Shown here: positions 1,956 to 61,201 of the stretch, in pieces
Layout: each line of letters opens with the position of its first letter
Numbering within the stretch: position 1 is the first letter of the stretch
From: Isurus oxyrinchus
Lineage: Eukaryota
Direction: 5' to 3'
DNA length: 64,000 bases
Assembly: GCA_026770705.1 (NCBI GenBank)
Contig: JANJGN010000034.1
Span: forward strand, 11,222,001-11,286,000
The notes under the pieces: generated by a model
Told to the model about the DNA's origin: nothing
Databases searched by the model: none
The model's input: the letters and a program-made list of their open reading frames with translations, nothing else
Position numbers and translations under genes: made by a program

Positions 1956-2115
1956 CTGTGGAAAGAAAAAGCAGACTGTGAAAAGTGGCGAAACTCGACA
2001 CAACGTATACTTTTGGAGGATGATAATAACAGCATTTCCTGATTTTCTCTGACAATTTCTTGCTGTCCTGTTTTTCCAGTCACTAAAAGAACTGATATGA
2101 GAAAGTGATCCTCAC

Positions 2116-2167
2116 CCGCAGATATCAATAAGCAAACGGCGACCGCGATAAACGTCAGACTCCCCAT
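2116..2167 (-). CDS. Exon 1 of gene A: signal peptide MGSLTFIAVAVCLLISA
   Basis: ATG at 2167, 52 nt, phase-1 donor G|gtgagg in frame with exon 2; exons of the same length at 37675-37726 and 61150-61201. Confidence 0.88.
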
Positions 2168-22117: not shown

Positions 22118-22124
22118 TTAATTC
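22118..22124 (-). pseudogene. Terminal exon coding part (G AAT TAA), 3' set Z
   Basis: Acceptor tttttccctctacag; phase-2 entry, one codon, then stop, as in three paralogous sites. Confidence 0.65.
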
Positions 22125-23260
22125 CTGTAGAGGGAAAAACATAAGTAACGTTGATCCTAAAAATGCATAAATAATTTTGGTGAAATGTATTCCTTTGGGG
22201 AAAAAGCTACTTATGTTAATGCTCATGTGAAGCAGCAATGTATACTTCTGCAAGGCTACAGTGATTTTTGGATGCATGATATTGCATTAAGCAAAATAGA
22301 CCAGAAAATAAGTTATGATGTTTGCTCCAAAAACAAACTTGCTTGGCTGCCAAAAAAGTGGAAGCAATTAAGTATTTTTCCCGTGCCATGTGCACTTGGA
22401 ACGTATACCCGATAGAAGATAAATTTGGCATCGTTTTGATATGTATTTTAAGGTCATGTTTCTACAGTGATGTTGCTCAGTTGTGGTTTTATTAGCATAG
22501 ATTAGAGTCGGTAGCATGTCTGATTTGCACAATCTGATTGGCCCAAGCACAGGTCCAATTTACGGCATTGGGTTTATTTGATGATTCAGAGCACTCCCCA
22601 CATCTGTGATGTTGGAAAAATGGTAGATTCCCCCATTCTCCTTCACACTACCTGATGCCGTACAACCCTAAGCACAGAACAAATCGGAAGCTAAATTTAT
22701 TAGCGCGCTTAGTTCTCAGTGCACGGTAGAAAGTTGTACTGGGAATCAAGGAAAATCACTAATTACAAGCTTCATTACCTTAAATCTGCTTTCTCAGCAT
22801 TCCGCAGGAATTCTGAAATCTTTTATCCAGAGTAATAACATTTAGGAAAATTTTCCAGGGCCCTATAAGAGGTTACATTATACTCGCATTATTCTGAAGT
22901 GCACGGTCGGCTGTTCACCCAAAATTTAAAGCTCTCAATGGTAAGTGTTGAAATTGAATTCAGTCCTTCTGGCAAATTATGATAGAGCGCAGCAAAGTTT
23001 CGTTGAAATTATTTTTACCGTGAAACCCTACTATTTCAACGATCTCCTCCCAGGAAAAATTGCAGTTCCCCCTATTTTGTCTACATGAATCTCCAGTCCT
23101 AGGAGACATGGCTGACTCTGAATGCAACGAGGACCCCTGGCGATCACACGTAATTACTGCCTTGTCCTATTACAATCCTACCCGGAGAACAAATAAACAT
23201 GCCTACATTTCGTTCTTTGTCAACATGGTGGACGGCTTAGGACATTTTCTAGCCACTTAA

Positions 23261-23304
23261 GGCGTCAAATCATAGTCAATTACTCGATCCTTCAGTTATA
23301 ACTC
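23261..23304 (-). pseudogene. Second ITAM exon, set Z, inactivated (EL*LKDRVIDYDLT)
   Basis: 44 nt, aligned to 35030-35073 and 42243-42286; in-frame TAA; donor GT>TT. Confidence 0.7.
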
Positions 23305-23429
23305 CTCTTATTTTTTTTTAAAGAGTTGTTGAATTTAGTAAACACCTTCATGGTCTGGGAAAACAGAGGTGAAATATGGAATAAATTGTAATTGAATGCT
23401 TAAAAGAATGCGCGAAATAATTTCCTGAC

Positions 23430-23470
23430 CACGTAAGTAGGGTTTTCGTCCAGTGCTTCCGTAGCCCCTC
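23430..23470 (-). pseudogene. First ITAM exon, set Z (..ATEALDENPTYV), 1-nt deletion
   Basis: ttgcatttttacag acceptor, gtcagg donor; 41 nt vs 42 nt in paralogs. Confidence 0.75.
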
Positions 23471-23963
23471 CTGTAAAAATGCAATTTCAAAATAAAAGAC
23501 ATGGCCATGTATACAGGGAATCGGTGTAGTTCTAAATTTAGAAGGGGAGTATGCCATATTAGAGGAGAGTGCCACATTTTTTACGACTAAATTCTATAAA
23601 CTTTCATATCTCCCAACTTAAATTTCAAGGCTGAATGTTCATTTTTTAAAAAATCGCTTTGGAAGACGAGCTTCCATTGCACTGAATATTCAGTTTTCAA
23701 ACCACGCGATTTTCATTCCAGTGGTAAAATTTGAAATTCACCCCAAAATTCCATCTTGCACCAGTAGTATTTTTGAATTGCCTTAAAGTCAAACTGGCCC
23801 ACCAATGGAGTAAGGCAAAGAAGACTGAAACCCTTTCCCTGGTCTGGCTTATCCGTGAATCCAGTTTCACTGCAAATACTTGAACACTAACGTTGTTGGA
23901 TGCACTTGGCAGCCTTTACTGGAACTCTCCAAAATAACGGCATAGCAGTATAATTGTACCAAC

Positions 23964-24010
23964 CTTATGTATCCTTGGAATTGTGTCATAGGTGCCTGCC
24001 GAATTCTCAC
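23964..24010 (-). pseudogene. Cytoplasmic exon, set Z (GENSAGTYDTIPRIHK), acceptor AG>CG
   Basis: 47 nt, aligned to 42927-42973; gttggt donor. Confidence 0.7.
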
Positions 24011-24810
24011 CGGTTGCAGCAAAATGGTCAGTGGGAATACGAAACGGTTAATCAGGCATGAACATAGAATCATGTAATCCTAGAATGGCACAGCAGAAAA
24101 TAAAGCCCTTTAGCCCCCCAGGCAAATACCAGGTCCTTGAAATTGTTATCCAGTTAAGCCCATTCCCCAGCCTTTTCCCCATAGCATTGGAAATGTGTCC
24201 CCTTCAAATATTTATATAATTCCCTCTTGAGATTTCTATTCAGTTTGCTTCCACCAGCCTTCCAATATGTGCATTCCAGGTTACAGCAACGGAATATAGA
24301 ATATATTCCATAAAATCTATTAGTTATTCGGCGTTCTTAATGAATACGCAACCCAATGCAAAATGAGACAACAATGTGAAAATAGATACAGAAACAGAGA
24401 TTGGGTGTTATAAAAGTCAAGGGATTTTCAGTAAGAAAAACGCTGGATAAACCATTCACAACTTGGTATTGCATTGAAAACCTACATTAAACAGAACACA
24501 TGCTGATGTCATTTTAATTTCCCATTATAGAATTAAGCAAGCTATGAAATTACTTCGTTTTCAAAGCATACAACATGGATTGTTGCATGAGGGTATCTCC
24601 ATTTATATGCAAACATAAAGCTTCAAAAACCTGTATAACAAGTGATTAGTTTAATTAACTACAAATCAACAAGTACTGCTAAAGGCTCTATGGTCACCGC
24701 AACATGGGAATGCAAAATTATCTCACTTTCTGTTTGCTACTGAACTATTGTTCATATCATTTAACTCTTGCTTTGGATTTTTCATCCTAAACAAATGTTG
24801 TTCAACATAC

Positions 24811-24858
24811 CTGAAATGTAAACTGTTCAGGAGGATATTAGATTGCAACATTTATGAT
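24811..24858 (-). pseudogene. Probable first cytoplasmic exon, degenerate; paralog at ~44455-44498 has both splice sites mutated
   Basis: tttctgttgcag...CAG|gtatgt lies between the TM exon and the next exon, where a phase 2-to-1 exon is required; contains stops. Confidence 0.4.
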
Positions 24859-25446
24859 CTGCAACAGAAATTTTATTCGTTAATGTCTTATTATTAGTGA
24901 AGGAATAAATTTCATGCACGCTAGGCAAAATCCACACCAGGAGCCACGACCAGATAGCGTCAGGCAAAGAGCAAATACATTGGTCAGAATTTTGGATAGA
25001 GCAAATAAATTGCTCAGAAGTTGGAGATGTAAATTAGATTTCACGCCTAAAGCCATATATCTGTCCTGCTTTTAAACCCTTCATTATTTAACTACGAATA
25101 GTCATCAGAACGTTAAGCTGCTGGGAGGCAGTGGAAAGTTGGTGGAAAAGATTCTCCGTGTTAAATTAAGAGGATTTTGGAAATGCAAAACTAAGTCACT
25201 GAATCAACAGGAGTAGAGGAATGTTATAACACCAGAATAAAGACATAATAAATGAAGAATTTTAGTCATACAATGTTTAAATTATTAATATTAACTATGT
25301 AAATGTACCTGATAAATATATATATATTTGATCAGTGCTGTAGAAATATTTAGAAACCACTTCTGTTTTACAAACTTACTTTAATTCAATCAGCCTGCTA
25401 TGGACAAAACTAAAGGTCCAGGTAAAATTTAAATAGAGCATTTTTC

Positions 25447-25570
25447 CACATGGTATCCTTTTCGATCAACTTCACACTTATATGGCTGATCAGTCCCAGA
25501 CTAAGATGAGCAACAAACATTATGCGTGCTTTTACGCCACTGTTGAATTGAATGTCGTAATTGAGTTGAC
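25447..25570 (-). pseudogene. Transmembrane exon, set Z, degenerate
   Basis: 124 nt, aligned to 45271-45394; SGVKARIMFVAHLSLGLISHISVKLIEK; donor GT>GA. Confidence 0.75.
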
Positions 25571-26597
25571 CTGAAAATGCAGAAAGAACAAATACTGAAT
25601 TTAATTATCACACGCCAAAAGTAATTGCAACCCAATAGCAATGTATATATATATCTAAGTTTCTATTGTCATAGTGCTTGACTGTTTCCAAGTTACAACA
25701 TTCAAAGAATAAATCTAGCCATGTTTGAATCCCATAGATCTAGTAGTCACCTCATTTAAATACACCTCTATGCAACTCCATGTACAACCAAATACATGCA
25801 TCTTTATGCGCGTGAACCCACGGTACATTTATAGTTTCTTTCTACAGCTGTTCCTGGCCAATAAAACCCCAGCTGCACGGAATGCAAACCCAATTGCTGA
25901 CTGATATCTTCCAAAATTCCAATAGACATTTAGGTTCCTTTCCACTCCCCTAAAAAAAGAATCCGTACATTTTACATTTCTTCAACTTCCGTCCCCTGAG
26001 CCTTTTAATAAGGTGCATTTTCTTACTATGATGTGACACTGGATGAAATTTGTGTTGGCTCTTTAACAATGCACAACATTGTTGATAGTGACGCAACAGA
26101 TCAGTTTACTTTTGGCCAGGCTCTAATATTTGCTTTTCATTGTAGGAAATTAGGTTGGGAAGGGACATTTAATATTGTCAGTATGGCTAAACAAGCAACA
26201 GGGGATTAGCCGCCTGTTGCACACAATTCCCGTACTTTCCCTTCCAAGGAATAAAAAGGAAAGCAAAAAAGTGGATTCTTCGGGGAATGCACGTGGTGCA
26301 GTGAAACTAATATTTAAAGCGGGGGTTTTACTGACCACTCCACAAAAAGAAAAATTGTTGCTTCGATTTCATGTGTTGAAATATATTGAACAGAAAAGTC
26401 CATGAAGTGTTATTAAGTCGTTACAATACATACATTGAAGTATAAGTAAAGAGCATTATGTGCCGGTTTGGGTATCACGCAGAGACAGTGATGAAAGCAT
26501 GTATATGATGGACTCAAGACCTGTAGTGTCTTGTCCTTATTGGAATTGTGTTGCAGCAGCTACTTTGATTGTTGGGCTTGCTTTTGCAACAACTCAC

Positions 26598-31740: not shown

Positions 31741-31747
31741 CTAATAT
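31741..31747 (-). other. Terminal exon coding part (A TAT TAG), set Y
   Basis: Acceptor ccctttttgcttctacag; completes ...YSELSR-Y-stop. Confidence 0.65.
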
Positions 31748-32548
31748 CTGTAGAAGCAAAAAGGGAAATAATGTTGATTCTAAATATGTGTAAGAAATTT
31801 TGTTAAATGCATTAGGTTTTGGAAATAGCAACACATTTTATTGCATTTATTGTAGCAGCAGTCTATGCTGCTGCAAGGGTGGTGTGTATTCTTGATGTGT
31901 GATCTTGAATAAAGCCATCAAATACATTGGAAAACAAGATGTGATGTGAGGTCAGACATTGAACTAACTTAACTGTTACAAATTTGAAGCACTTGGGATA
32001 TTTTTCTTGCGCCCTTCACACTTGGGTTACATGCCCAACAGACGATAAATTCAATGCTGTTTTAACATATATGTATAAAACCATGGTTCTCCAGTCCTGT
32101 TGCTCAGTTGTGGAATGATTAGCATAGAAGAGTACGTGGAGAAATAGGATCTGATTGGCCCAAACATGGGTAGGTCCATTTACAAAGATGGCTGCTGTTG
32201 TTGATTAGGAGCATAAACATTGATCTTCCAACTCTCCACATGTGGAATGTTGGCCGAATTTTCGAAACTGTCATGCCCAGTAATGGCATATCCTAATCCT
32301 AAGTTTGAAAATATGAACCTTACATAGTGTGGCAATATGTGGACCTGGCTTATCTTTTAAAACTAGAAAATATGTGCTTGAAAAGATGTGCGCCAAAGGT
32401 CTTCAGACCTGATGTGTGAATTAAAAAGCTGCCAAACTTTCTCGCAACGCCAAAAGAATACAGGCCAGACTAAGAGATTTGAACTTCCATATACAGTACT
32501 GAGACAATCCTAAGGTCATTCCTGAACTGAACGGGTCTTTCTGAAATA

Positions 32549-33194
32549 AAACAAAAAAACTGCGGATGCTGGAAATCCAAAACAAAAACAGAATTACCTG
32601 GAAAAACTCAGCAGGTCTGGCAGCATCGGCGGAGAAGAAAAGAGTTGACATTTCGAGTCCTCATGACCCTTCGACAGAACTTGAGTTCGAGTTCAAGAAA
32701 GAGTTGAAATATAAGCTGGTTTAAGGTGGGGGGGGGGGGGGGGTGGCGGAGAGAGAGAGAGAGGTGGGGGGGGGGGTTGGTTGTAGGGACAAACAAGCAG
32801 TGATAGGAGCAGATCATCAAAAGATGTCAACAACAATAGAACAAAAGAACACATAGGTGTTAAAGTTGGTGATTAGATAATTAGCACATTCGTTTAGATA
32901 ATATCACCAACTTTAACACCTATGTGTTCTTTTGTTCTATTGTTGTTGACATCTTTTGATGATCTGCTCCTATCACTGCTTGTTTGTCCCTACAACCACC
33001 CCCCCACATCTCTCTCTCTCTCCGCCCCCCCCCCCCCACCCCCCCACCTTAAACCAGCTTATATTTCAACTCTTTCTTGGACTCGAACTCAAGTTCTGTC
33101 GAAGGGTCATGAGGATTCGAAACGTCAACTCTTTTCTTCTCCACCGATGCTGCCAGACCTGCTGAGTTTTTCCAGGTAATTCTGTTTTTGTTTT
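32549..33194. mobile_element. Young Penelope-like insertion forming a near-perfect inverted repeat (~297-bp arms at 32577-32873 and 32903-33196)
   Basis: 16-bp direct repeat GGGTCTTTCTGAAATA at 32533-32548 and 33195-33210; empty site in the paralog near 40470. Confidence 0.88.
33092..33130 (+). ncRNA. Minimal type I hammerhead-ribozyme-like motif (variant core); mirror copy on the - strand at ~32643-32681
   Basis: AGTT-CTGTCGA-A-GGGTC(ATGAG)GATTC-GAAA-CGT-C-AACT: stem I, core, stem II, palindromic ACGT stem III, GUC site; core position 6 is U rather than A. Confidence 0.55.
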
Positions 33195-34136
33195 GGGTCT
33201 TTCTGAAATACCGGCGGTTATCGTCAAACAACTAACAAGCAGTGACTTAACAAATTAGCATTAAGTCTACATTTTGAAATGGGAACAGTGAGAAGTCACA
33301 TGACATGGTAGCCATTTTACTCTCCATTTTTAACTCTAACTGCTGTCTGCAGAGACACAGAATCAGCACAAAAGTCAGTGGCATAGGTACCTTAAGAAGG
33401 AGAGACTGCAAAACCAAATGGTCTTTAAACCTGTTAGATTTTGGATCCACCAACACTCAAAATGGATCAGCTGGTAACGAAAACACAAGCAACTGACTTT
33501 GCGACCTTCAGAAATCCCTCTCTTCGCTAAAATCCTGATATCCTCTTCAGCAGGTTACTCCGGTTGTTGAACTTACTAAGCTGCAATTCAGGAGTGGAGC
33601 GATCCTTTCCATTGGGCCTGCAATGCGTGTTTTACAGAATAGGACAATCACGTGAATTATGGACTATTCACTTTGCTTATAGTTTGTAAACGTGCACTGT
33701 TCTTTTCAACTGTACTTTCTTTGAGTGTGTTTGTGCGTGTGACTGCCTGAGTGGCGGCAATAGCGTTACATTGAGCGTCCAAATTAGCATTTGTATTTAA
33801 ACCCACAAAGAGTTGGCTGTCGGATATTCAAATTGTCACGCACGCAGGGACTAATAACCATACATATATTCTTTTGAAAATTGTACTGAAAACGGACCGT
33901 AGGGAAGGGAGCAAGAATTTCAGTGGTTCTCCTTCCTTACCGCGTCTGTAACACCCCCATTCCCCTTCTGACCGTCTAAGGTGATGGCTGCCAAAGCACA
34001 GAACAAATTTAAGATAACTTGATCAAGAAGTAAACTGCTCAGTACACGGCAGTAGTTTGCCTTTGGAATGAAGGAAAATCACCGTCGTAAGCTTTAATAT
34101 TATTAACTTAAATCAGCATTGTCAGTTGTTACTTTC

Positions 34137-34562
34137 GCAGAATTCAAATAATACCTTCAGTATTGCTGAAAAAAGAGACGTTGAAGTTGTTCGTCTTGCA
34201 CTTATCAGGACACTTCGCAAGAACACCAATTTAAGGGGGGACGGGGAAAAACTTTAGACTGTATATAAAGAGAATGCAAGGCAAGTGGACACTGATTGGT
34301 AGTGGCTTTGGTATGGAGAATGCGCCAGAGATGGTGGCTAGCAGTTACCTGTCAAGAATTGTTTGAAATTTAAACCAGGCAGCTTGATCCTGATTGATCA
34401 AGAGGAAAGAATCAGTGAACAGCTATCACTTATGTTGCTTTGTTATGTTTTGTTTTGTTCCCCTTATGTGGGCATTCTTGCAAGTGTTCTGGTGAGTGCA
34501 AGACGAAAGACTTCAACATGTCCCTTTTACAGCAATACTGAAGGTATTGTTTGAATTCTGCA
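34137..34562. mobile_element. Second-family Penelope pLTR inverted-repeat insertion with degenerate hammerhead motifs
   Basis: Arms ATACCTTCAGTATTGCTG / CAGCAATACTGAAGGTAT; TGTT-CTGGTGA-GTGCAAGAC-GAAA-GACTTC-AACA at 34485-34518; absent from paralogs near 22800 and 41600. Confidence 0.7.
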
Positions 34563-35029
34563 TGTAGTATGAAGTCTTTGACCCAAAGCAACAGCATTTT
34601 AGAAAACAATCCAAATATTTGCACACAGGTCACAATATATTCCAACAACAGGTGTCTTCCTCAATCGGACTGTGGACCGTTCATCCAGTGTTCAAAGTTC
34701 CGAGGGGCAAGTGCTGAAATTGAAATCACTAGGCCTGGTAATTTGTGAGCGAGCACTGAATAAAAACTATGAAATTGGTTTTATAGTAAAACCCGACTAG
34801 TTCAGTAATGCCTTTCCTGGAAAATTGCATTTCTCCTGATTCAGTCTACATCACCATCAAGTCTTACAAGATTTCATTGACACTTAATACTATGAGGACC
34901 CGTGGAGATCTTATATAACCACTACCCTGCCATTTGATAGCCCTATCGTGAGAACAAATGCAAATGCCTAAAGTTCATATATTTCTTTTTAATATGATAG
35001 ATGATTTGTGAAATTTTCTATCCTCAGAC

Positions 35030-35073
35030 CTCGACAGTTCGCTGTAATCTGACTGATCCTGCAGTTGTAATCC
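35030..35073 (-). other. Second ITAM exon, set Y, open (GLQLQDQSDYSELSR)
   Basis: ttcattttaacag acceptor, 44 nt, phase 0-2, weak donor gtctga. Confidence 0.8.
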
Positions 35074-35202
35074 CTGTTAAAATGAAGAAAAAAATAAGTG
35101 CATTTAGTTTTGGTGAACAGCAATCGACAGTGGTAAAATAGACTGAGGTGAAATAAATTGCGAGAGTATAATTTAATGAAATGTGCAAAATAATGTCCTG
35201 AC

Positions 35203-35244
35203 CATGTAAGGAGAGCTTTCACTAAATGGTTTTGTAGCTGGTTC
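35203..35244 (-). other. First ITAM exon, set Y, open (EPATKPFSESSPYM)
   Basis: ttttatttgcacag acceptor, gtcagg donor, 42 nt, phase 0-0. Confidence 0.8.
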
Positions 35245-36944
35245 CTGTGCAAATAAAATTTGAAAAACAAAATATAAGCAACTGACACAAACCATCTATG
35301 CCCCGGTCAATATTCAATTCCTTGACTATATTAGAACTGAATATGGGATAGAGCGTATCATAGACAATACACACATACCTTTGATATGCCCTGCCCAAAA
35401 TTTCAGTCGTAAAGTTAAACTCATGACGCCATTACAGAACACACAACACTTGTTCGTTGCACTGGGTGGCTGAGAAGTATAAGGAGTGAACTGTTACGAA
35501 ACTGCAGGGCATAGAATAGGCGGGCAATATGTTTGAACTTCAATGTGTTAAGAAGAAATTTCACCCAAATGGTATTTCGCAATCACCCTGTCAATAGCGA
35601 AGGTATAGCTGAGAAAGCAGAACAGGAAAACAACAACTTGTCTTTATATAGTTCCATTAACTTAATGATCGGACCCAAGGCACTTTGCACTCCTATCACT
35701 AAACAAAATTTGTCAACATCTAGATAACGTAGAACCTCAGGATACTAGAAGCTCCAACACGACTGCTGAAAATAATGAAAGTTAAAAATGAAATGAACTC
35801 TTCTGAAATCAATTCCACGAAGAATGGTCAATGAAATGAAAAGGGTTTCTTTTGGAAATAAGAGCATATAAGGAGGATTTATATTAAAGTTTCAGTTATG
35901 TGATGATTTCATGCCTTTCCCCGTTTATTTGACAACTCCTGCCCCTTTGACTGCGAACTTATTGTCCAATCGCAATTCCGATCACATGCCCTGTTTTCTA
36001 TGGCCTTCCCCTGTCCTCTCCCACACACCAATAACCAATAACGCATTCGCCACCCCCCCCCCCCCACTCCCCCTCCCATCACCAGTGGCCTCCCCCACTC
36101 CCATTACCAGTGGCCTCCCCACTCCCATTACCAGTCACTACCACACTCATCTCACCAGTCCCTCCTACACTCTTATCACCTAACCCCTACCCCACTTCAG
36201 TCTTAAGTCCACTTCCCTACTCCTTTCAGAATTCCCTCCCCAACTCTCGTCTTCCTTGACTACGTTGCCCAGTTCTGTCGCCCACTCCGGTCACTTTTCC
36301 CCTCCCCCAGTCCAATCACCTTTCACCTTTCCAACTCTGATCCCTTTAGGGACTCACAAACAGGAAAGCCAATGGAAAATGGCTGCCAACAGAGAAGAAT
36401 CATGATTTAGGAAGTACACTTCTGTCCGCTTGCTTGGTGTATCACGAAGAGGCATGGAGGCTTGTGCCGTTCAGCATATACCATTTATTGTTTTCACACA
36501 ACTTTACGCATATCTCCAAGGCATAGAACTATCTCGTTGTTGTTTTCATGCTAATTGCTCTCAGACTCTGTACACACTGTATACTATCATGTGACACTCT
36601 ACATCACAATCTGGGCAGTATCTTTCTCCAGTCCCATACTAACTTTTGCATGTCCAATTACACTAAAACAATATAGACTTCGTCAAATTCACGTGTGACG
36701 ACAACAATCACAGGGAAAAATTCATGAACAACACTCATCCCTTGAAGAGGACTTTGTACTGTCAATTCAAACAAGTGCGCTCCGCACATGCGCAGAGCGA
36801 TCGGCGACGTCAACAGCCCGCGTGGGCAAATTCGCCAGTGCCTGGACTGATTCACGCATGCGCGCGTTGCTCCTCCCGCCTCCTCACGCGTAAACGGCTG
36901 TGGCCTCCTAGCGCATGCGCAGAGCGAGGCGCCGTAGCACTTGC

Positions 36945-37726
36945 CAGGGACATGCAGGGCGATTCTTTCGCATGTTTTCGTTTATATTGGCACAGTGTAA
37001 TCTCCACCGTTCCAAACTGTCCATCATTTCAGTAGGAGTGATCCTTTAGGCACGAATAACGCTGTCTTCAATTGTTTGTATTTTTTTATTTATGAAGCTG
37101 GACACACCAGGAATTCCCACGTCCAACCCTTCACACCATCTGAGGGTTTAACAGAAAAAAGACAATGCGTTTCATCTGACAGTCTCATTAATCCGAATGT
37201 TTAAGGGACAGAGAAATCCTGAGACTCAGATGAGGAAAAAAACGCGCAATGAGAAAAGCGGTCAAACTCGGCACAACGTAGGCTATCTTGTAACTATGTT
37301 GATAGTGCTATCTCCACTGTCCAAACCTGTCACTGAATTCAGCAGGGAGGATCCGTACGGGAGGAATAACTCAGCCCGTTCATAGCGTTCAGAGCCTGCA
37401 CGGAGACACTTTGCGATACCTTTGTCCCCGAATTGCTAATTCCCATTCTGCGCCACAGCTGACGGCTCCACCCGAAAAAATGTAGCGTTTCCTCCCACAT
37501 TAAACCGACTGTTTTCTGAGGAAATATATCCAAAATAATAAAAGCGGTCAAACTCGACACAACATACACTTTTCTAATGTGATAATAATAACATCCACTG
37601 ATTTTGTCTGACAATCTCCTGCTGTCGTACTTCTCCAAACATTAGAAGGAGTGATACGAGAAAGTGATCTTCACCCACTGGTATCAATAAGCAGAGAGCT
37701 CCCGCGCTAAGCGTCAGTCTCCCCAT
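36945..37726 (-). pseudogene. CEACAM-like pseudogene B 5' half: signal exon 37675-37726, IgV-1 ~37283-37515, IgV-2 36945-37229
   Basis: MGRLTLSAGALCLLIPV|gtgaag; YERAELFLPYGSSLLNSVTGLDSGD; second V with acceptor CAT and GC donor; multiple stops and frameshifts. Confidence 0.88.
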
Positions 37727-39683: not shown

Positions 39684-39690
39684 TTAATGT
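39684..39690 (-). pseudogene. Terminal exon coding part (A CAT TAA), set X
   Basis: Acceptor caattttgcttccacag; completes ...SELMR-H-stop. Confidence 0.65.
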
Positions 39691-42242
39691 CTGTGGAAGC
39701 AAAATTGAAATAATATTGATTCCAAGCATGTACAAGCAATTTTGGTGAAATGCCTTGCCTTTGGGAAGTAGCAGCAGTTCATTGCTTTTGTGAAGCAGCA
39801 TTCTATGCTGCTGCAAGGGTAAAGTGCATTGCTGATCTATAATATTTTATAACCCGCCAAAATCCACTGGGAAACAATATATGATGTGTGCCCAGAAAAT
39901 AAAATTCTTGGTTGCTGGATATTGGAAACAATTGAATTTGTTTCTTGTGCCATGCACATTTGGAGTTCATGCCTGATGGAGGATCTTTTAACGTTGTATT
40001 AAACTTTGTGCATAAAATAGTTCTGCAATGGTGCTGCTCAGATTTGGGTTGGTTGAGATAGTAATAACGTCTAGAGACAGCACATGGGCAGGATCTAACA
40101 GGCACAAACACAGTTACATTTCACATCATGGGTTGCATTTTGATTAGTAGCACTAACATTGAATTTCATACTCTCCCGATCTTCAATATTAGATTGAACT
40201 TAGGGCCTCTGTCATGTCAGTAACACGATGTCCTGTTTTAATACTTACAAATATGAACTTTACTCAGTGTGGAATCGTCTGGAACTGTACTTTCCTTCTA
40301 AGATGGTCAATATGTGCTGTAAAATATGGCTCCCAAAGGACATTAAGACTGATAAGTTAATTCAAAGACTGTCACACTATCTAGTGAAGATAAAATGATA
40401 AAGCCCAGACTAAGAGATTTCACTCACCCGTACCCTGAGACTATCCAAAGGACATCTTGAATTGAATTTGCCTTTCTGAAATAAAGTCAGCGATGGCCTC
40501 AACCCTTCTCATTATGAATGCCTGCCAACAAGGAACCAGGTTATGGATAATCAACAACAACACCATATTTGGAAAGAGGAACTGGGAGAAGTCACATGCT
40601 GGGTTGACATGGCTGTCCCCTGCGTCATTTTTAAGTGTTGTGTGCAGAGCCACGGAAGCAGCAGAAAAGGCAGGGCGTTAAGAACATGAGACTGTAAAAC
40701 TATAAGTTCTTCAAGCCTGTTCCTTTTCAGGACCACCAACACTGAGAACTGATGTTCTGGTAAAGTGACTAGAAGCAAGTACCCTCGTGTCCTGAAAAAT
40801 GTTCATGTCTTCAATAGAATCCTAAGAACCACCTCAGCAAATGACTCCGGCTGTTGAACTTATTTTCATAGCCTGAGGATAATATACTTCATCTGATGTT
40901 TTAAAAAGTACTTTATTCTTCGTCATGACCGCGGTCACAGCCCCGAAATACTTACGAAATGTTGAGCTTTTAAGTAAGATGTGAATTTTTTTAATGGACT
41001 CACAAGCAAAACTTGTCTAGGAGTGTACTGCTAACATTTGCCGGAAAATTGCGATGTGGATTACACTTGGCCAAATAGCCCAGAGAACAGTATATTGCAC
41101 CTAATCAGTGTTTCACAAAATAGGGCAATCACGTGAATCATCAATTAATCGCTTTCCTTAGAACTTGTAAAAGTGCATTGTGCGCTTCAATTGCACATTA
41201 TTTGAGTGAATTTTTGTCTGTAAATATGTGAGTGAGGCTTTAGTGTTAGATTGAGCGTGAAAGCAAACAATTGTCTTTATTTAAACGCACAATGAAGTGG
41301 CTGCCGGTTACTCAAATTGTCCACACATTCAACATTTTACTGATTACCGAAAACTGGGAAGGGAACAGGGATTACCATGGCTCCCCCCCCCACCCCCCCA
41401 CACCCTGTCTCTAACAGCCCCTGCCCACTTCCCACCACCTCATGTGATGCTTGCCAAGGCGCGGGACAAATTGACGCTAACTTGCCCAGAACTTTCGTGT
41501 TCATTACGTAGCATTGGCTCATCATTGGAACCAAGAGTGGTCACGAATCTGGAGCTTTACTATTGTTACCTTAAATCAGCTTTCTCAGTTTGTGCTTTGT
41601 TTGCATTCTGCAGGGAATTTGCCCCAAAATAGCAACATTTTGGAAATCGAGCCACGGATGAACACTCAGTTCACAACATAATCAAACTACAGGTGTTATT
41701 CTCAACCGCACACCCAGAGTTCAAAGTCCTCAGTGGCAATTGTTCAAATTGGAGTCACTAGATAAGGTCATTTGTGAGCAAGCACAGAAAAATTGCTATG
41801 AAATTATTATTTTTTGATATAAAACCTGACTATTTCAGTCATGTCCTTTGTGGCAAATTGCATTTCACCCCATTCAGTCTACATCAGCCAACATGATATG
41901 GCTGACACTGAAATCCATGAGGATACGTGGAGATCACTCTTGAACACTGCCTTGTCATGTGTATCCCTGTGCTGAGAATAAATGTCGAGACATGACACGG
42001 TGGTTGCTGAAAGGATTGCTCCCCTTGTGAGAAAGAGTAGATCAATGGAACACAGTTTTAAAATAAGGGCCACAATCAGTGCAGCCACGATCTTATTCAA
42101 TAGTGGAGAAGTCTTGTAGGGGCCGAATGGCCTACATCTGCTGCTGATTCGTACACACGTTAGTTCTTAAATGGAAAAGCCTACATTCTGTTGGATTTTT
42201 TGAAATATGGCAGATGGCGTGTGAAATTTCCTATCAACATAC

Positions 42243-42286
42243 CTCATCAATTCACTGCAAACTGACCGATCTTGTACTTGTAATCC
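42243..42286 (-). pseudogene. Second ITAM exon, set X (GLQVQDRSVCSELMR; second Tyr replaced by Cys)
   Basis: ttttaacag acceptor, AG|gtatgt donor, 44 nt. Confidence 0.8.
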
Positions 42287-42415
42287 CTGTTAAAATTAAT
42301 AACGTATTTGTTTTTTAGTCAACAACAATAGAGTGTGTTAAAAGAGATATGAGATGAAATATAAAATAAAAAGTAAGAAAATGATTTAAAGGAATTCACA
42401 AAATAATGTCCTGAC

Positions 42416-42457
42416 CATGTATGTAGAGTCTTCCTCAAGTGGTTTTGTAGCTTGCTC
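42416..42457 (-). pseudogene. First ITAM exon, set X (EQATKPLEEDSTYM)
   Basis: ttgcatttttacag acceptor, gtcagg donor, 42 nt. Confidence 0.82.
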
Positions 42458-42926
42458 CTGTAAAAATGCAATTTGAAAAACAAAATAGAAGCAGGTACAC
42501 AAGAAATCCCTGTAATTACTTCAGAATTTTGAACGATTAGAATGTCATATATCCCACAATAAAAGGTGATACAGTTTTCCGAAATTAGCTAGCCCTAAAT
42601 TAAATTTCAGGAGTGAATGTTCATTGTTAACAAGCAGTGAAAGAAGGGCAGCCGCGCACAGAATATTCATTTCACTCATCAGTCGATCATCATTGTTCTG
42701 GTAAAATTGAACATTACAGCAAATGTTCCATCCTGCACCAAGGGCCTTTTTTAGATGTTTTTTTTTTTAAAAAGGAGCTGCTCCACAGACAAAGAAGACT
42801 GAAACGCCTAACCTACTCTGGCTTAGCCCCGAATCCAGTATACTCCAACTGCATGAACAATGACATTGTTATCCTCACTGGAATAAACTCGCCAATGTGA
42901 CCATGTGTTAATACAATTGTACCAAC

Positions 42927-42973
42927 CTTTTGCTTTCTTGGAATATTTTCGTAAATCGATGCTGAGTTCTCCC
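42927..42973 (-). pseudogene. Cytoplasmic exon, set X (GENSASIYENIPRKQK)
   Basis: ctcttctgcattag acceptor, AAG|gttggt donor, 47 nt, phase 1-0 and compatible with the next exon. Confidence 0.8.
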
Positions 42974-43019
42974 CTAATGCAGAAGAGCAGTCTTTGAGAA
43001 TGCAAAACAGTTAATCACA

Positions 43020-43555
43020 TCTCCACATATAATCGTCGAATCATACATTGACAGAGCACAATCGGTAGTCTTTCAGCCCACCATGCCAGTATCAGCTCTT
43101 TGAAAGTGCAATACAAATAATTCTATTCCTCAGCCATTTACGCATACCCTTGTGAGTAAGCTTCCTTAAAGTATATATCCAACGTCGTTGTGAAGTGAAT
43201 ATTAAATGTGATTCCACCTGGTGTCCACCCGCTGAATCCTGATCATTGCATTTCGCTGCCTAAAAATAAATTTCCGACTCTCGCAGCTATTTTTTTTTGG
43301 TAATTAGATTGCATTTCTATCAACTGTTTACTGATCCACCTATGGCTGCTTACAGTTTCTCATAATTTTCTCTATCATGATATTTCGCTATTTTGAACAC
43401 CTCTGTAAAATCTCCAATTAGCCTCCCTGCTTTAAGGAGAAGAAGCCCATCTACTCCCGTTCCTCCACGGAGCTAAAGTCCTACTTCTCTGGTACTATCC
43501 CTGTAAATCTTCAGTACACATTATCCAAGACAGTAACATTGGTCCTAAATCATTG
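43020..43555 (-). mobile_element. Old CR1 3' fragment (partial paralog at 24060-24290)
   Basis: Degenerate reverse complement of a CR1 tail. Confidence 0.55.
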
Positions 43556-45270
43556 AACCATGTACATGCCAATAGAGTAGAACTGTTGCTTCATGTTCTG
43601 AGACATTGCAGCTTTTGTTTCTCATTGTTCTGTTTTTGGTTTCTGGTTGGATTATGTTCGCACTAATTTAATTATTACTTGGTTTGTTAGGTCAATTTTA
43701 TGACCTAAGTGCACAATTTTAACAGCCGTAATCAAGGAATGAAAAATAGGTGGGAATTTAATTCTACGTTTTTCAATATAAACCAGGAGACATGTAAAAT
43801 TGGCTGCTGTTTCGCCATCATCTATGCTACATTCAGACAAAAGGGTGAAACGATCCTTGGTAATTCATCATGTGAAGCTGACAGATTCTCCACTTTGAGC
43901 GCCCAAGTAGCAGAAAACATAATAGTTAATTCCAGTCAAAACCTTTGTCTCAACGTCAGCTCTGTATGTGTACACAAATCTATCCGGTTTGGAACTTTCA
44001 CGAGGAAATGTACAAGTAACTGTAAAATGAGGCATTCGTATGAAAATAGATACAAAAGCATATATTGGATGTTTTTAATGTCAAGGTATTTTCAGTAAGA
44101 CATACTTTGCACGAAAGATTGCTTCCTTTCATCGTTCACAAGCTGTATTAAACAGAACGTTAAGCGATACATGTGTTGATGCCAATTTATTTTCAAATGG
44201 CGTTTAGCATGTTAGGCAATTGTGCGTAAAAGCACTCAACAAGAATTAGGTTATCTAATTTGACGTGCAAACGTAAAGCTTCATAAATCTGCCCGATGTA
44301 TGCTTATTTAAATGAACTTCAAATCAAAAAGCACTGTTGTCGCCTGCAATGCTATGGCATGGAAATTTCACTTATTCTTCACTGTTGGATGAAGGTTCAT
44401 CACATTTCGCCCTTGTGTTGGTTCTTGCTTCCTAAAGAAATGTAGGGCAACATAATAAAATAAATCTTATCAGGACGATATTATATTGTAATCATGATAT
44501 GCAACAGAAATCCTATTTGTTAATGTCTTATTATTAGTGAAAAATGTCTTCCTAACTGGAGGGAACAAATTTCATTCGTACTGGGCAACATTGACATTCT
44601 TTTATTCTTTTACGGGACGTGGGCGTCGCTGGCTGAGCCAGCATTTTTTATTGCCTATCCCTAATTGCCCTTGAGAAGCGGTGGTGAGCAGTCCTCCTAT
44701 ACCACTGCTGTCCATATGGTGTAGGTTCAACTAAAATGCTGTGTGCGAGGGACATTAACCTAGCGACAATGAAGGAACATCAGGCGGGAAGCCCAAATCG
44801 ATTCAGGCAAATTGGGATAGATTAAATAAATTGGCCAGAAGCAGGAGATATCAGATAGATCAGCAGTATAAAGCCGTACATTTACGTCCCTGTTTTTGCA
44901 ACAATAATTTACATTGCTACAAATATTAAAGCATCAAGATTATGAGCTGATGCAGCAGGAGAGTAAAGTTGGCGGAAAGTTAAAATGTTCACAATTCGAG
45001 TAGTTGGGAGATGCAAAACTAAGTCACTGCATCAGCAACAGTAGTGGACTGTAATTATACAAGAGTGGGGAGCTAATAGAAGGAGATTTCTGTCAATCAG
45101 AAATATAAACGATTATTATTGAATGTGTAAACAGGCCTCACACGTTTATAGATTTGAAAAGAGATATACACATATTTTGAAACAACTTTTCGCTCATTTA
45201 CTTTGATTCAATTCATCAGGCTACAGACAAACTACTAAAGGGGCAGATAACATTTACATAGACTATTTAC

Positions 45271-45394
45271 CAGCATGCTTTCCTTTTGATCAGCCACGCG
45301 CTTATCCCGCCGATCATTCCCAGAATAAGTAGAACAGCAATCACGATGCCTGCTTTGTGACCACTGACTAATTCATTGGTGGAGAAATGTTGTT
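45271..45394 (-). pseudogene. Transmembrane exon, set X, open: QHFSTNELVSGHKAGIVIAVLLILGMIGGISAWLIKRKAC
   Basis: gcatttttag acceptor, TG|gtaaat donor, 124 nt, phase 1-2; ~21 hydrophobic residues followed by a KRK stop-transfer; AGIVI motif as in CEACAM TM exons. Confidence 0.85.
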
Positions 45395-59310: not shown

Positions 59311-60385
59311 AGCGTCTAGATAATATGTTAGCTTAGGGCAGTAGAAGCTCCTGCATGAATGTTGGAAATGATGAAAGTCAAAAAAGAAATGAACTCTCCT
59401 GAAACCAATTCCACGAATACTGGCCAAGGAAATGAAAGGAGTTTGCTTTGGAATGAAGAGCATATAAGAGCTTTTATATTAGAGTTTCAGTTATGTCATG
59501 ATTTTGTGCCTTATTCAATGGTCGCCGCCAGTTTGGATGCAAATTCATGGTCCAGTCGCCTTTCTGATAACATGTCCTGTTCCGCACTGCCTTCCCTTGT
59601 CCTCTCCCACACACCAATATCCAAATGGAACGCTGTCCCCTCCCCTACTCCCATTACCAGTGAACTCCATAGCTCCCATCACCAGACCCTTCTGCACTGA
59701 TCTCACCAGTCCCTCTGACACTCATATCACATAGCCTGCACCACACTCCAGCCTTAGTGTCACTTCCTCGCTCCTCTCAGAATTCCGTCCACAAAACTCA
59801 TCCCCCTTGACTAGTCTGCACAGTCCTGTCACCCACTCCGGTCACTTTTTCACATCCCCAGTCTAATCAACTTACACCTCTCCCACTCTGATCCCTTTAG
59901 GATCTCACAAGCAGGAAGCTAATGGGAGATAGCTGCCAACAAGAAAGAAGCGTGAATTAGAGAGTGGACTTGTAGGCTTGCTTGGTGTCTCACCAAGAGG
60001 TGTGGAAGTTTGTGTGGTTGAGCATATAGCATTTATTGTTAACACACAACTATTTACATATCTCCAAGGTATAGCCCAAGGTATAGCTGTTTTCATGCTG
60101 ACTGCTCTCAGACTCTCTACACACTGTATACTATCATGTGACACTCTACATCACAATCTGGGCAGTATTGCTCTCCAGTCCCATATTAACTCCTGCATGT
60201 CCAACTACACTTATACTATATTGACTTCGTCAATGTTCATGAGTGACATTGGGTGCACAGCTCTGGATGGGCAGTTATCAGACTCAGCAGCCTCCCTGCA
60301 CTCCTCCTGTCCTCCCCATGCATAAACCGCATTGCTGATTGTGGTGTCTTCGCGCAAGCGCAGAGCGAAGCGCCATATCACTCGC

Positions 60386-61201
60386 CAGGGAAATGCTTTC
60401 GCTTGTTTGCGCTCTTGTGGGCGCAGTGTAATCTCCACCGTCCCACACTGTCAAGGGCTTCAGTAGGAGTGATCCGTTAGACAGGAACAAGGCTGTATTC
60501 AATTGTATTTTTTTAATTGTGAAGCTGGACGGACCATTCCACACCAAGAATTTTGTCTTCCCGAAGTACCACGACCAACCCTTCACACCATCTGAGAGTT
60601 TAACTGAAAGAAGAATGCATTTCCTCCGACGGTCCCATTAATCCGATTGTTTCCTGTCAGAGACAGTAAAACCCTGGGGCACAGATGAGGAAAATAAACC
60701 CGTAATGAGAAAGGCGGTCACACTCGGCACATCGTTGGCTTTTCTGTAACGATGTTGTTAGTGTAATCTCCACTGTCCGAACCTGTCACTGAATTCAGCA
60801 GGAGGGACCCGTAAGGGAGGAATAACTCAGCACGTTCATAGCATGCAATAGTTCTAGCAGAGCCTGCATAAAGCCACTTCGCGATACTTTTGTCCCCGAA
60901 TTGCCATCTCCCATTCCGCACCACAGCTGACGGCTCCACCCGAAAAATCTACAGCGTTTCCTCCCACGGTCGCATTAGTCCGACTGTGTACTGAGGAGGG
61001 AAATCCAAAGTAATAAAAGCGGTCAAACCCCACACAGCATACACTTTTCGAAAGTGATAATAATAACATCCACTGATTTGCCCTGAGAATCTCGTGCTCT
61101 CATTCTTCTCCAAACCTTAGCAAGAGTGATACGAGAAAGTGATCCTCACCCACAGGTATCAATAAATCAACATGTCCCGCGCAAAGTGTCAGTCTCCACA
61201 T
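60386..61201 (-). pseudogene. CEACAM-like pseudogene C 5' half: signal exon 61150-61201, IgV-1 ~60745-60990, IgV-2 60386-60684
   Basis: MWRLTLCAGHVDLLIPV|gtgagg; NATVGGNA/fs/VEPSAVVRNGRWQFGDKSIAKW..LPYGSLLLNSVTGSDSGDYT; second V WSWYFG..LFLSNGSLLLKPLTVWDGGDYT with frameshifts, CAT acceptor and GC donor. Confidence 0.88.

What the first reader, a model, noticed from the sequence alone, without database searches (positions are those of the whole stretch)
39684..45394. Hidden ITAM-bearing CEACAM-like receptor family in a shark-like genome
Seen: five minus-strand exons with AG/GT borders, none in the ORF track: TM 124 nt (phase 1-2), 47 nt (1-0), 42 nt (0-0), 44 nt (0-2) and a terminal 7 nt. They give ...AGIVIAVLLILGMIGGISAWLIKRK.. 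[a phase 2-1 exon is missing or decayed] GENSASIYENIPRKQK-EQATKPLEEDSTYM-GLQVQDRSV(C/Y)SELMR-H*. The set recurs at 22.1-25.6 kb and, in part, at 31.7-35.2 kb, interleaved with signal exons and Cys-less IgV exons on the same strand. Established: CEACAMs have a disulfide-free IgV N domain and a phase 1-2 TM exon with an AGIVI motif, and activating members such as CEACAM3 have an ITAM split by a phase-0 intron inside the first YxxL. Inference: this is an expanded family of activating CEACAM-like receptors with a built-in ITAM, possibly decoy or paired pathogen receptors. I am not aware of a description of this in cartilaginous fish but cannot check.
Basis: partly seen in the sequence, partly recalled or inferred. 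Interest (0 to 1): 0.82.

Follow-up and report, generated by a model that had tools for sequence, protein, structure and literature searches.

The report
Decayed shark CEACAM-type activating receptor copies
The small exons are real and belong to a shark family of CEACAM-like immune receptors with a built-in activation motif, but public gene catalogues already list the family and the copies in this window are broken pseudogenes or fragments.

Summary
A spliced contig from a probable RNA run joins the 47-nt exon to the 42-nt exon at exactly the predicted borders.

The reading is right for the family but not for this locus. A profile of the shark proteins hits the CEACAM1 N domain best among solved structures. 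Outside cartilaginous fishes it found only CEACAM-named or unnamed proteins.

The family is not hidden. RefSeq already has models with this architecture, for example white shark XP_041032829.1 "CEACAM4-like": signal, Cys-less V, TM, YENI and ITAM. Models carrying this tail exist in 18 named shark, ray and chimaera species.

In this window:
- Copy A (39.7-45.4 kb) has an in-frame stop and no GT donor in its second cytoplasmic exon, Cys in place of the second ITAM tyrosine, and only frameshifted V exons upstream.
- Copy B keeps only the last three exons.
- Copy C has a dead TM exon and a frameshift.

I found no paper describing the chondrichthyan family in five searches. Other first-stage notes report the same tails up to about 210 kb beyond the window. 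Interest is modest.

The parts
45271..45394 (-). Copy A, transmembrane exon (124 nt, phase 1 to 2), open and with AG/GT
   Evidence: tblastn to P0025 gives 83.7% over 49 aa, E 1.9e-21. X6 contig record 23 lies on 45273-45395 only.
44344..44431 (-). Copy A, decayed remnant of the phase 2-1 cytoplasmic exon. In-frame TGA at 44370-44368. The position where the family's ..SIA|G end would fall has GC, not GT. It is 88 nt long, where intact relatives encode 24 residues.
   Evidence: tblastn QEPTQGRNVMNLHPTVKN vs QEPTRGQNATNISPIVNS of P0025. Tail alignments. DNA contigs of a sister organism carry 14 extra letters at 44353-44364.
42927..42973 (-). Copy A, 47-nt exon (phase 1 to 0) encoding ENSASIYENIPRKQK, with a YxNx motif
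   Evidence: The spliced joint to the next exon is in X6 record 18.
42416..42457 (-). Copy A, 42-nt exon (phase 0 to 0) encoding EQATKPLEEDSTYM. It ends inside the first YxxL of the ITAM.
   Evidence: Identical in 14 of 14 residues to P0025. Joint.
42243..42286 (-). Copy A, 44-nt exon (phase 0 to 2) encoding GLQVQDRSVCSELM. The second ITAM tyrosine is Cys (TGC at 42259-42257).
   Evidence: Relatives have Y here.
39684..39690 (-). Copy A, coding part of the terminal exon (A CAT TAA)
   Evidence: Homologous ends sit in copies B and C.
60330..61201 (-). Signal exon (61201-61150, hydrophobic core interrupted by H and D) and two degenerate V exons: V' about 61006-60761 and V'' about 60684-60424. 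These are the only V exons upstream of copy A. There are frameshifts and stops, no AG at the V'' acceptor position, and GC at its donor position.
   Evidence: Pfam finds no family at E <= 1 in the two longest open pieces.
36900..37726 (-). Signal exon (37726-37675) and two degenerate V exons: V' about 37531-37311 with a TAG, and V'' about 37229-36980 with several stops. About 78% identical to the 61-kb unit.
31741..35244 (-). Copy B, only the last three exons: 35244-35203 (EPATKPFSESSPYM), 35073-35030 (GLQLQDQSDYSELS) and 31747-31741. All have AG/GT and the ITAM core is intact. No TM exon, second cytoplasmic exon or 47-nt exon was found upstream.
22118..25594 (-). Copy C, decayed. The TM exon homologue (about 25594-25423) has a 1-nt insertion, GA in place of the GT donor and a polar 'TM'. 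The 47-nt homologue (24010-23964) has no AG acceptor. The 42-nt homologue (23470-23430) is 41 nt, so frameshifted. The 44-nt exon is barely recognisable. The terminal coding part is 22124-22118.
1638..2167 (-). Intact signal exon (2167-2116, phase 1 donor) and intact Cys-less V exon (1955-1638, 318 nt, phase 1 to 1). They belong to a neighbouring family gene that runs off the window start. They are not linked to any ITAM exon set here.
   Evidence: 88% identical to white-shark XP_041032783.1 (P0005: two V, TM, no ITAM). AlphaFold model of a V-type beta sandwich, pLDDT 89.6.
63401..63984 (-). Copy of the 3' flank that follows copy A (84% identical to 39583-39003). It implies a further tail copy just beyond the window end.
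   Evidence: An earlier first-stage note, s1-896978, reports such a tail 2.7 kb beyond the window.

Best explanation
The stretch 39,684-45,394 holds the membrane-anchor and tail exons of a pseudogenised copy of a cartilaginous-fish CEACAM-family activating receptor. It is a close relative of white-shark XP_041032829.1, named 'CEACAM4-like'. It sits in a tandem cluster that gains and loses copies. Two further decayed or partial copies lie downstream.

Intact family members are type I membrane proteins. They have one or more disulfide-free V-type N domains. Their TM helix has no charged residue, so no adaptor is needed. Their tail carries YENI (a YxNx site) followed by a canonical ITAM (D-x-x-YMGL-x7-YSDL). 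The first YxxL of that ITAM is split by a phase-0 intron.

Inferred, not shown: ligand binding at the N domain clusters the receptor. Src-type kinases then phosphorylate the ITAM, and Syk/ZAP-70 docks and activates the cell, as for human CEACAM3. In rays and bamboo sharks the N domains of ITAM members cluster with those of ITSM-tailed members of the same taxon. That is the paired-receptor pattern.

Copy A itself cannot make such a protein as assembled.
For: Exons and borders. Spliced contig across the 47/42-nt junction, and a contig covering the TM exon only.

Close match to P0025: (TM exon E 1.9e-21; 42-nt exon 14 of 14 residues).

Full architecture in natural database proteins.

CEACAM affinity:
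- Profile against PDB: top three hits are rodent CEACAM1 N domains at 6.4e-12 to 3.4e-11; CD48 scores 3.9e-4.
- Profile against 5.8 billion proteins: 78 hits. 43 are chondrichthyan and 35 are from bony vertebrates. Of those 35, 26 are named CEACAM, 9 are unnamed and 0 belong to another family.
- The GAIAGIVI stretch occurs in mammalian and teleost CEACAM TM regions.

Tail conservation: an HMM built from 8 shark tails hits ray tails (about 1e-11 to 1e-19) and chimaera tails (about 1e-9). In all, 48 of 229 stored proteins hit at E <= 1e-3, the 8 training rows included.

Pseudogene state of A: TGA at 44370-44368 and GC at the donor position; TGC for Tyr; broken V exons. No other V exon was found anywhere in the window.

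States of B and C.

Paired pattern: (Mobula 97/99, Hemiscyllium 97/76, Hemitrygon 84/53).
Against: No reads of the window's own species were available. The stop, the Cys codon and the V-exon frameshifts therefore rest on the assembly alone. The DNA runs laid belong to an organism about 3% different. Only 40 of 265 base differences and 12 of 24 indels were listed, so I could not see its state at the Cys codon.

The RNA-like contigs are 91-97% identical to copy A. They could come from the orthologous locus in another species, which would mean that locus is expressed there.

X6 is labelled RNA only as a guess.

Synteny with the CEACAM locus of bony vertebrates could not be tested.

The fold search and the language-model search gave only generic V-set neighbours, with PD-L1, CD48 and TIGIT first.

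The shark tail shows no detectable sequence similarity to tails of the 35 bony-vertebrate CEACAMs. Homology of the ITAM module across vertebrates is therefore not shown.

Signalling through Syk is inferred from the motif only.
Confidence: 0.78

Rival explanations
1. Copy A is a working gene. On this view the apparent defects are assembly errors or are bypassed by other exons, and the locus encodes an ITAM or half-ITAM receptor.
For: The TM exon and four of the five following tail exons are open with correct AG/GT borders and mutually consistent phases. RNA-like contigs match the TM exon at 119 of 123 letters and the 47/42-nt exons at 80 of 88. One frameshift in V' lies in a T run.
Against: The defects are several and independent.
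- An in-frame TGA, an 88-nt length and no GT in the second cytoplasmic exon.
- Skipping that exon would shift the frame, because phase 2 would join phase 1.
- Cys replaces the second ITAM Tyr.
- The signal peptide has H and D in its core.
- V' and V'' each carry frameshifts or stops, and there is no AG at the V'' acceptor position.
- No other V exon lies between 45.4 and 60.3 kb.
Confidence: 0.1
2. The family is not CEACAM. It would instead belong to another group with disulfide-free or similar V domains (CD2/SLAM, HEPACAM, VSTM5), and the CEACAM names would be artefacts of automatic annotation.
For: With the single V exon, CD48 gives the only near full-length alignment (residues 13-105, E 0.012). 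CEACAM chains score only 0.09 to 0.7. Pfam Receptor_2B4 is among the precomputed domains of some members. Foldseek puts PD-L1, CD48 and TIGIT first. The first language-model cluster has Receptor_2B4 in 23% of its members. RefSeq names vary: HEPACAM-like, VSTM5-like, unc-89-like.
Against: With a profile, CEACAM1 N domains lead by about 17 bits over the next V-set family, and CD48 falls to 3.9e-4. In the large protein search no hit outside Chondrichthyes carries another family's name (0 of 35). The TM stretch, the phase-0 split of the ITAM and the YxNx motif agree with CEACAMs. Caveat: one search scored only the 8,000 candidates sharing most words, limited to 129-411 aa.
Confidence: 0.08
3. The tail of intact members works mainly as an inhibitory or endocytic signal rather than as a Syk-coupled activator.
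For: Both ITAM tyrosines sit in S/T-x-Y-x-x-L contexts (STYMGL, SVYSDL). These also fit the ITIM consensus I/L/V/S-x-Y-x-x-L/V given in PMC5112662. The same authors call CEACAM ITAM-type motifs 'endocytic'.
Against: The spacing (7 residues), the acidic residue at -3 and the two YxxL fit the canonical ITAM consensus. Separate family members carry distinct TxYxxI/V tails that look like the inhibitory partners.
Confidence: 0.12

Closest known systems
[quoted passage not shown]
   Same: Same exon-by-exon products. TM exon 83.7% over 49 aa. The 42-nt exon peptide is identical in 14 of 14. The 44-nt exon peptide matches in 12 of 15. Same order YENIPRKQK, EQATKPLEEDSTYM, GLQVQDRSV...
   Different: The white-shark model is one open frame, with a single intact V domain and Tyr at both ITAM positions. 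The window copy has a stop in the second cytoplasmic exon, Cys at the second Tyr and only broken V exons.
ITAM or ITAM-like CEACAMs of tetrapods (human CEACAM3/CEACAM4; Xenopus and reptile ITAM Ceacams)
   Same: One Cys-less N domain, a TM without a charged residue and a built-in ITAM-type tail. The first YxxL is split by a phase-0 intron and a YxNx motif lies upstream (legend in PMC5112662; abstract and passages of PMC13278318). Marsupial 'CEACAM4-like' hits also show YEN.. upstream of Y..L-x7-Y..I/F.
   Different: The shark tail HMM finds none of the 35 bony-vertebrate CEACAMs, so the tails may not be homologous. The shark motif is a full canonical ITAM. Human CEACAM3 is said to have an 'ITAM-like' motif (abstract of PMC5112662). 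What I say about human CEACAM3/4 beyond those abstracts is recalled.
CEACAM1 N domain (rodent structures 5vst, 3r4d, 1l6z)
   Same: Best profile match among solved structures, 6.4e-12 to 3.4e-11. It is aligned mainly over strands D to G..NGSLLIQRVTVKDTGVYT... The TM stretch GAIAGIVIG is shared.
   Different: CEACAM1 has C2-type domains and an ITIM/ITSM tail. Ray and bamboo-shark members with C2 domains and TxYxxI/V tails look like its counterparts, not the ITAM members.
CD2/SLAM family V domains (CD48, CD58, 2B4)
   Same: Also V-type domains that align end to end with the single shark V exon (CD48, E 0.012). They are structural neighbours.
   Different: They lose to CEACAM once a family profile is used. 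None appears among the 78 hits.

Membership tests
CEACAM family | N-terminal V-type Ig domain without the canonical disulfide pair | tested here: met
   The intact V exon 1955-1638 encodes 105 residues with no Cys. The V domain of P0025 has none either. The fold model is a V-type sandwich, pLDDT 89.6. That this feature defines CEACAM N domains is recalled knowledge.
CEACAM family | N-domain sequence closer to CEACAM N domains than to other Ig families | tested here: met
   Profile against PDB: CEACAM1 at 6.4e-12, next V-set families at 1e-6 or worse, CD48 at 3.9e-4. Profile against the protein collection: 26 of 35 non-chondrichthyan hits are named CEACAM, 9 are unnamed and 0 belong to another family. 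The single-sequence, fold and language-model searches were not discriminating.
CEACAM family | TM region with the (L)SGGAIAGIVIG-type stretch | tested here: met
   Copy A has HKAGIVIAVLL. Shark relatives have SGAIAGIVIAV. Mammalian, amphibian-neighbour and teleost CEACAM hits have GLSGGAIAGIVIG/A. That it is a hallmark is my inference.
CEACAM family | ITAM-type tail with the first YxxL split by a phase-0 intron, and a YxNx motif upstream | tested here: met
   The intron lies between ..STYM and GLQ.., phase 0, in copies A and B. YENI is in the 47-nt exon. The RNA-like contig confirms the preceding junction. The criterion comes from a legend in PMC5112662.
CEACAM family | Location in the conserved CEACAM neighbourhood (markers such as ATP1A3, PAFAH1B3, CNFN, LIPE, listed in PMC3628338) | not testable with these tools
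   No such gene lies in the window. tblastn and ORF lists show only family exons and repeats.
CEACAM family | Members with C2-type Ig domains and ITIM/ITSM tails alongside activating members (paired receptors) | tested here: met
   Met for relatives, not in this window. Mobula, Hemitrygon and Hemiscyllium models with Ig_2 domains and TxYxxI/V tails share the same type of N domain and cluster with ITAM members of the same taxon.
Canonical ITAM (D/E-x-x-Y-x-x-L/I-x6-8-Y-x-x-L/I) | Both tyrosines present at the right spacing | tested here: not met
   Copy A reads D-S-T-YMGL-QVQDRSV-CSEL, with the second Tyr replaced by Cys (TGC 42259-42257). Copy B (YMGL-QLQDQSD-YSEL) and database relatives meet it.
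Functional gene (this copy) | One open reading frame through all exons with usable splice sites | tested here: not met
   TGA and GC-for-GT in exon 44431-44344. V' and V'' are broken. This rests on the assembly. No reads of this species were available.

The most novel reading that the evidence does not exclude
Cartilaginous fishes have a complete paired CEACAM system. It combines single-V activating receptors carrying a dedicated YENI-plus-ITAM tail, about 44 residues long and conserved from chimaeras to sharks and rays, with ITSM-tailed CEACAM1-like partners whose N domains evolve in concert with them. The activating arm sits in large clusters of fast gene birth and death, of which this window is a graveyard segment. 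If so, activating ITAM CEACAMs date back to the jawed-vertebrate ancestor rather than arising repeatedly from an inhibitory CEACAM1-like gene. No paper found in my searches describes this.
Probability: 0.45. Interest if true: 0.45.

Novelty: new member of a known kind. Interest (0 to 1): 0.3.

Why it matters
For this locus it matters little. It is a decayed copy in a multigene cluster, and annotation pipelines already model its intact relatives.

For the family there is a modest gap. The papers I could search base 'CEACAM in cartilaginous fish' on little-skate ESTs only (PMC3628338, PMC4079198). A 2026 preprint from the main CEACAM-evolution group still cites just those two for this clade (PMC13278318).

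The database models show an ITAM tail conserved across sharks, rays and chimaeras. They also show ITAM and ITSM members with co-clustering N domains. A proper description would push the paired-receptor (decoy) logic of CEACAM1/CEACAM3 back to the base of jawed vertebrates. It would also bear on whether the ancestral CEACAM was inhibitory only.

Tried and rejected
1. Single-sequence searches with the V exon (Pfam; PDB) gave only sub-threshold generic Ig hits and could not assign a family. I replaced them with profile searches.

2. The fold search of the V model and the language-model atlas returned generic V-set neighbours: PD-L1, CD48, TIGIT, and mixed V-set clusters. They confirm the fold and say nothing about the family.

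3. I first considered a longer form of the 47-nt exon with an upstream acceptor, because the open frame continues upstream and resembles ..CPAARGESS.. of P0025. I dropped it for three reasons. The phases do not close with any donor of the preceding exon. The family alignment places 24 residues in the preceding exon.

4. I looked for a TM exon, second cytoplasmic exon or 47-nt exon upstream of copy B (35.3-36.95 kb) and found none; best local scores were 18-22.

5. I looked for further signal or V units in the window and found only three.

6. I tested whether the shark tail is alignable with tetrapod ITAM CEACAM tails. No hit at E <= 1e-3 among the 35 bony-vertebrate proteins held.

7. The tree has no outgroup families and several long branches, and its bootstrap had not settled. 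I use it only for within-taxon clustering.

8. The RNA search found no run on record as RNA that holds the stretch. Expression of this very copy is therefore untested.

Figure S2 of PMC3628338 (zebrafish ITAM) and Additional file 1 of PMC5112662 (tail alignments with exon phases) could bear on how close the shark tail is to known ones.

Each exon was examined apart, and full-length searches used natural database proteins only.

Full report
WHAT IS THERE

The window comes from a shark genome (earlier notes of this scan).
- A 124-nt exon (45394-45271, phase 1 to 2) encodes ..SGHKAGIVIAVLLILGMIGGISAWLIKRKAC.
- A 47-nt exon (42973-42927, phase 1 to 0) encodes ENSASIYENIPRKQK.
- A 42-nt exon (42457-42416, phase 0 to 0) encodes EQATKPLEEDSTYM.
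- A 44-nt exon (42286-42243, phase 0 to 2) encodes GLQVQDRSVCSELM.
- The terminal coding part is 7 nt (39690-39684).

The intron between the 42-nt and 44-nt exons cuts the first YxxL (YM|GL) in phase 0.

This is not a chance pattern. tblastn of a natural database protein (P0025) against the window gives E 1.9e-21 for the TM exon. The 42-nt exon product is identical in 14 of 14 residues.

SPLICING EVIDENCE

No run on record as RNA holds the stretch. I laid two DNA-like runs (X1, X2, organism A) and two runs guessed to be RNA (X6, X9, organism B) on 39600-45500.

In X6, a 1,959-nt contig lies on 42971-42926 and continues on 42456-42415. It has 8 mismatches in 88 letters.

A 215-nt X6 contig lies on 45273-45395 only, with 4 mismatches in 123 and both its ends off the stretch. 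That is what a spliced TM exon would give.

The DNA runs do not show the joint. These contigs come from a paralogue or from another species, not demonstrably from this copy.

The contigs of X1 and X2 differ from the window by about 3%. No reads of the window's own individual or species were seen.

THE 'MISSING' EXON

The phase 2-1 exon is not missing. A remnant with a good acceptor starts at 44431 and reads KQEPTQGRNVMNLHPTVKNK. This matches MQEPTRGQNATNISPIVNS.. of P0025.

It then runs into TGA (44370-44368). The point that would correspond to the family's ..SIA|G end has GC instead of GT. It lies 88 nt from the acceptor, in the wrong frame. Intact relatives encode 24 residues here.

Skipping the exon would join phase 2 to phase 1 and shift the frame. 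The sister organism's DNA has 14 more letters at 44353-44364, so this exon is indel-ridden.

OTHER DEFECTS OF COPY A

The second ITAM tyrosine is Cys (TGC, 42259-42257). Relatives have Tyr there.

The only V exons upstream on this strand are at 61.2-60.3 kb.
- The signal exon has H and D in its hydrophobic core.
- V' has a frameshift and lacks its 3' third.
- V'' has frameshifts and stops, no AG at the acceptor position and GC at the donor position.

No other V exon lies anywhere between 45.4 and 60.3 kb. As assembled, copy A is a pseudogene.

THE RECURRENCES

Copies A, B and C are colinear duplicates at 65-73% nucleotide identity, introns included.

Copy B (35.3-31.7 kb) keeps only the last three exons. 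All have AG/GT and the ITAM core is intact: YM|GLQLQDQSDYSEL. It has no TM exon, second cytoplasmic exon or 47-nt exon. The V unit just upstream (37.7-36.9 kb) carries a TAG in V' and several stops in V''.

Copy C (25.6-22.1 kb) is decayed.
- Its TM homologue has a 1-nt insertion, a polar 'TM' and GA for the donor GT.
- Its 47-nt homologue has no AG.
- Its 42-nt homologue is 41 nt long.
- Its 44-nt exon is barely recognisable.

A copy of A's 3' flank at 63.4-64.0 kb (84% identity) points to another tail just beyond the window. This agrees with first-stage note s1-896978.

The one intact V exon (1955-1638, 318 nt, phase 1 to 1, no Cys) and its signal exon are 88% identical to white-shark XP_041032783.1. 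That model has two V domains, a different TM and no ITAM. It belongs to a gene that leaves the window, not to any ITAM set here.

WHAT THE FAMILY IS

I searched the V exon product against 1.84 billion representative proteins. It gave 227 hits at E <= 0.001 and 69 at E <= 1e-10.

Many of these hits join V domains of this type to a TM of the AGIVIA type and a tail ..YENIPRKQKE..STYMGLxLQDRSVYSDL... They are RefSeq or UniRef models from sharks, rays and the elephant fish. Their names vary: CEACAM4-like, CEACAM3-like, CEACAM6/7/15/20-like, PSG22-like, HEPACAM-like, VSTM5-like, unc-89-like or uncharacterized.

P0025 (white shark XP_041032829.1, 'CEACAM4-like', 235 aa) is signal, one V, TM, YENI and ITAM.

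By my count, models that hit a shark-only tail HMM at E <= 1e-5 come from 18 named species. In all, 48 of the 229 proteins held hit at E <= 1e-3, including the 8 training rows. Ray tails score about 1e-11 to 1e-19 and chimaera tails about 1e-9.

IS IT CEACAM?

The V exon alone gives only marginal generic Ig hits: Pfam V-set at 15.9 bits, below the cut-off; CD48 at E 0.012 and CEACAMs at 0.09 to 0.7.

A profile of 17 sequences changes that. Rodent CEACAM1 N domains come first (6.4e-12 to 3.4e-11), the next V-set families score 1e-6 or worse, and CD48 scores 3.9e-4.

A profile of eight single-V ITAM members against 5.8 billion proteins gave 78 hits.
- 43 are chondrichthyan.
- 35 come from mammals, amphibians and teleosts. 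Of these, 26 are named CEACAM, 9 carry no family name and none carries another family's name.
- Only the 8,000 candidates sharing most words, of 129-411 aa, were scored.

The TM stretch GAIAGIVI(G/A) recurs in those mammalian and teleost CEACAMs.

The phase-0 split of the ITAM's first YxxL and an upstream YxNx motif are described for ITAM Ceacams. I read this in the legend of Additional file 1 of PMC5112662 (passages only).

The AlphaFold model of the V exon is confident (pLDDT 89.6). Its Foldseek neighbours are generic, with PD-L1, CD48 and TIGIT first. The language-model atlas likewise gives mixed V-set clusters, with a CEACAM8-like cluster at rank 7.

Synteny could not be tested. I therefore file the family under CEACAM with good but not complete support.

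HOW INTACT MEMBERS PROBABLY WORK

Shown:
- a Cys-less V-type N domain;
- a TM without a charged residue;
- a canonical ITAM (D-x-x-YMGL-x7-YSDL) preceded by YENI.

Inferred from established ITAM biology: clustering by a ligand, phosphorylation by Src-family kinases, docking of Syk/ZAP-70 through tandem SH2 domains, and Grb2-type binding at YxNx.

Both tyrosines also fit the ITIM consensus S-x-Y-x-x-L, so an inhibitory or purely endocytic use is a minor rival.

In a tree of N domains (43 rows, no outgroup family, bootstrap not fully settled), ITAM and ITSM-tailed members of the same taxon group together. Support is Mobula 97/99, Hemiscyllium 97/76 and Hemitrygon 84/53. This is the pattern of paired receptors known for CEACAM1/CEACAM3 and for Xenopus Ceacams (abstract of PMC5112662).

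The shark tail is not detectably similar to the tails of the 35 bony-vertebrate CEACAMs held. Common descent of the ITAM module is therefore open.

WHAT IS KNOWN

Five literature searches found no description of a chondrichthyan CEACAM family.
- PMC3628338 (passages read) reports a CEACAM homologue in little-skate ESTs, and ITAMs in 'select teleost homologs'. [quoted passage not shown]
- PMC4079198 (passages read) rests on one skate EST sequence.
- The 2026 preprint PMC13278318 (abstract, passages and reference list read) cites only these two for this clade, besides works on mammals, Xenopus and zebrafish. It proposes an inhibitory CEACAM1-like ancestor.

So ITAM-bearing CEACAMs are a known kind. 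Their presence in cartilaginous fish is stated in print and modelled in RefSeq. A detailed account of the shark and ray families seems not to be in print within the library searched.

VERDICT

- Observation: confirmed.
- Interpretation: right for the family, wrong in calling it hidden, and wrong for this locus, which holds one broken copy, one three-exon fragment and one decayed copy.
- Novelty: a new, dead member of a known kind.
- Interest: 0.3.

Every exon was treated apart, and full-length comparisons used natural database proteins.

Other first-stage notes of this scan report the same kind of tail 2.7 kb, 126 kb and 209 kb beyond the window's end. None had been followed up.

Noticed in passing
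window 44600-44680: A short element inside copy A's intron is extremely abundant in the reads. Summed contig depth is about 1.8e5 in X1 and 1.1e6 in X2 in that bin, with many loose ends on both sides. It has relatives at about 55.2-55.4 kb, 11.3-11.4 kb and 2.4 kb of the window. It is probably a SINE-type repeat.
   Followed up: no
P0163/P0186 (Cetorhinus maximus LOC144671645): Basking-shark RefSeq models of 127-133 aa consist of a short start, the TM helix and the full YENI-plus-ITAM tail, without any V domain. This is either a V-less signalling chain or a transcribed remnant of a gene whose V exons died. It parallels first-stage note s1-898334, 'intact TM + ITAM module attached to a dead ectodomain'.
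   Followed up: no
window 60330-61010 and 36900-37540: Both degenerate V units share an odd structure. A V exon is truncated after ..DSGDYT and fused to a second copy of the 3' end of the leader intron, followed by a second V exon. This is a partial tandem duplication that predates the duplication of the two units, which are 78% identical over 1.1 kb.
   Followed up: partly
window 55100-56300 and 2400-3000, 10900-11200: Open frames resemble the C-terminal part of a LINE reverse transcriptase (..ALAWMSAA..TLKKLDTIQ.KAARLI..) on both strands. They fill much of the 15-kb gap between the 61-kb V unit and copy A.
   Followed up: no
Ray and bamboo-shark proteins P0037, P0053, P0070, P0162: CEACAM1/5-like models with several Ig domains carry tails with two TxYxxI/V motifs (TEYAEI .. 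TDYAEV, or TAYAEL). Their N domain is of the same type as in the ITAM members. They are likely the inhibitory partners.
   Followed up: partly
window 41385-41400 (minus strand): There is a G-rich run (..tgggggggtggggggggag..) inside copy A's last intron. No further meaning was sought.
   Followed up: no
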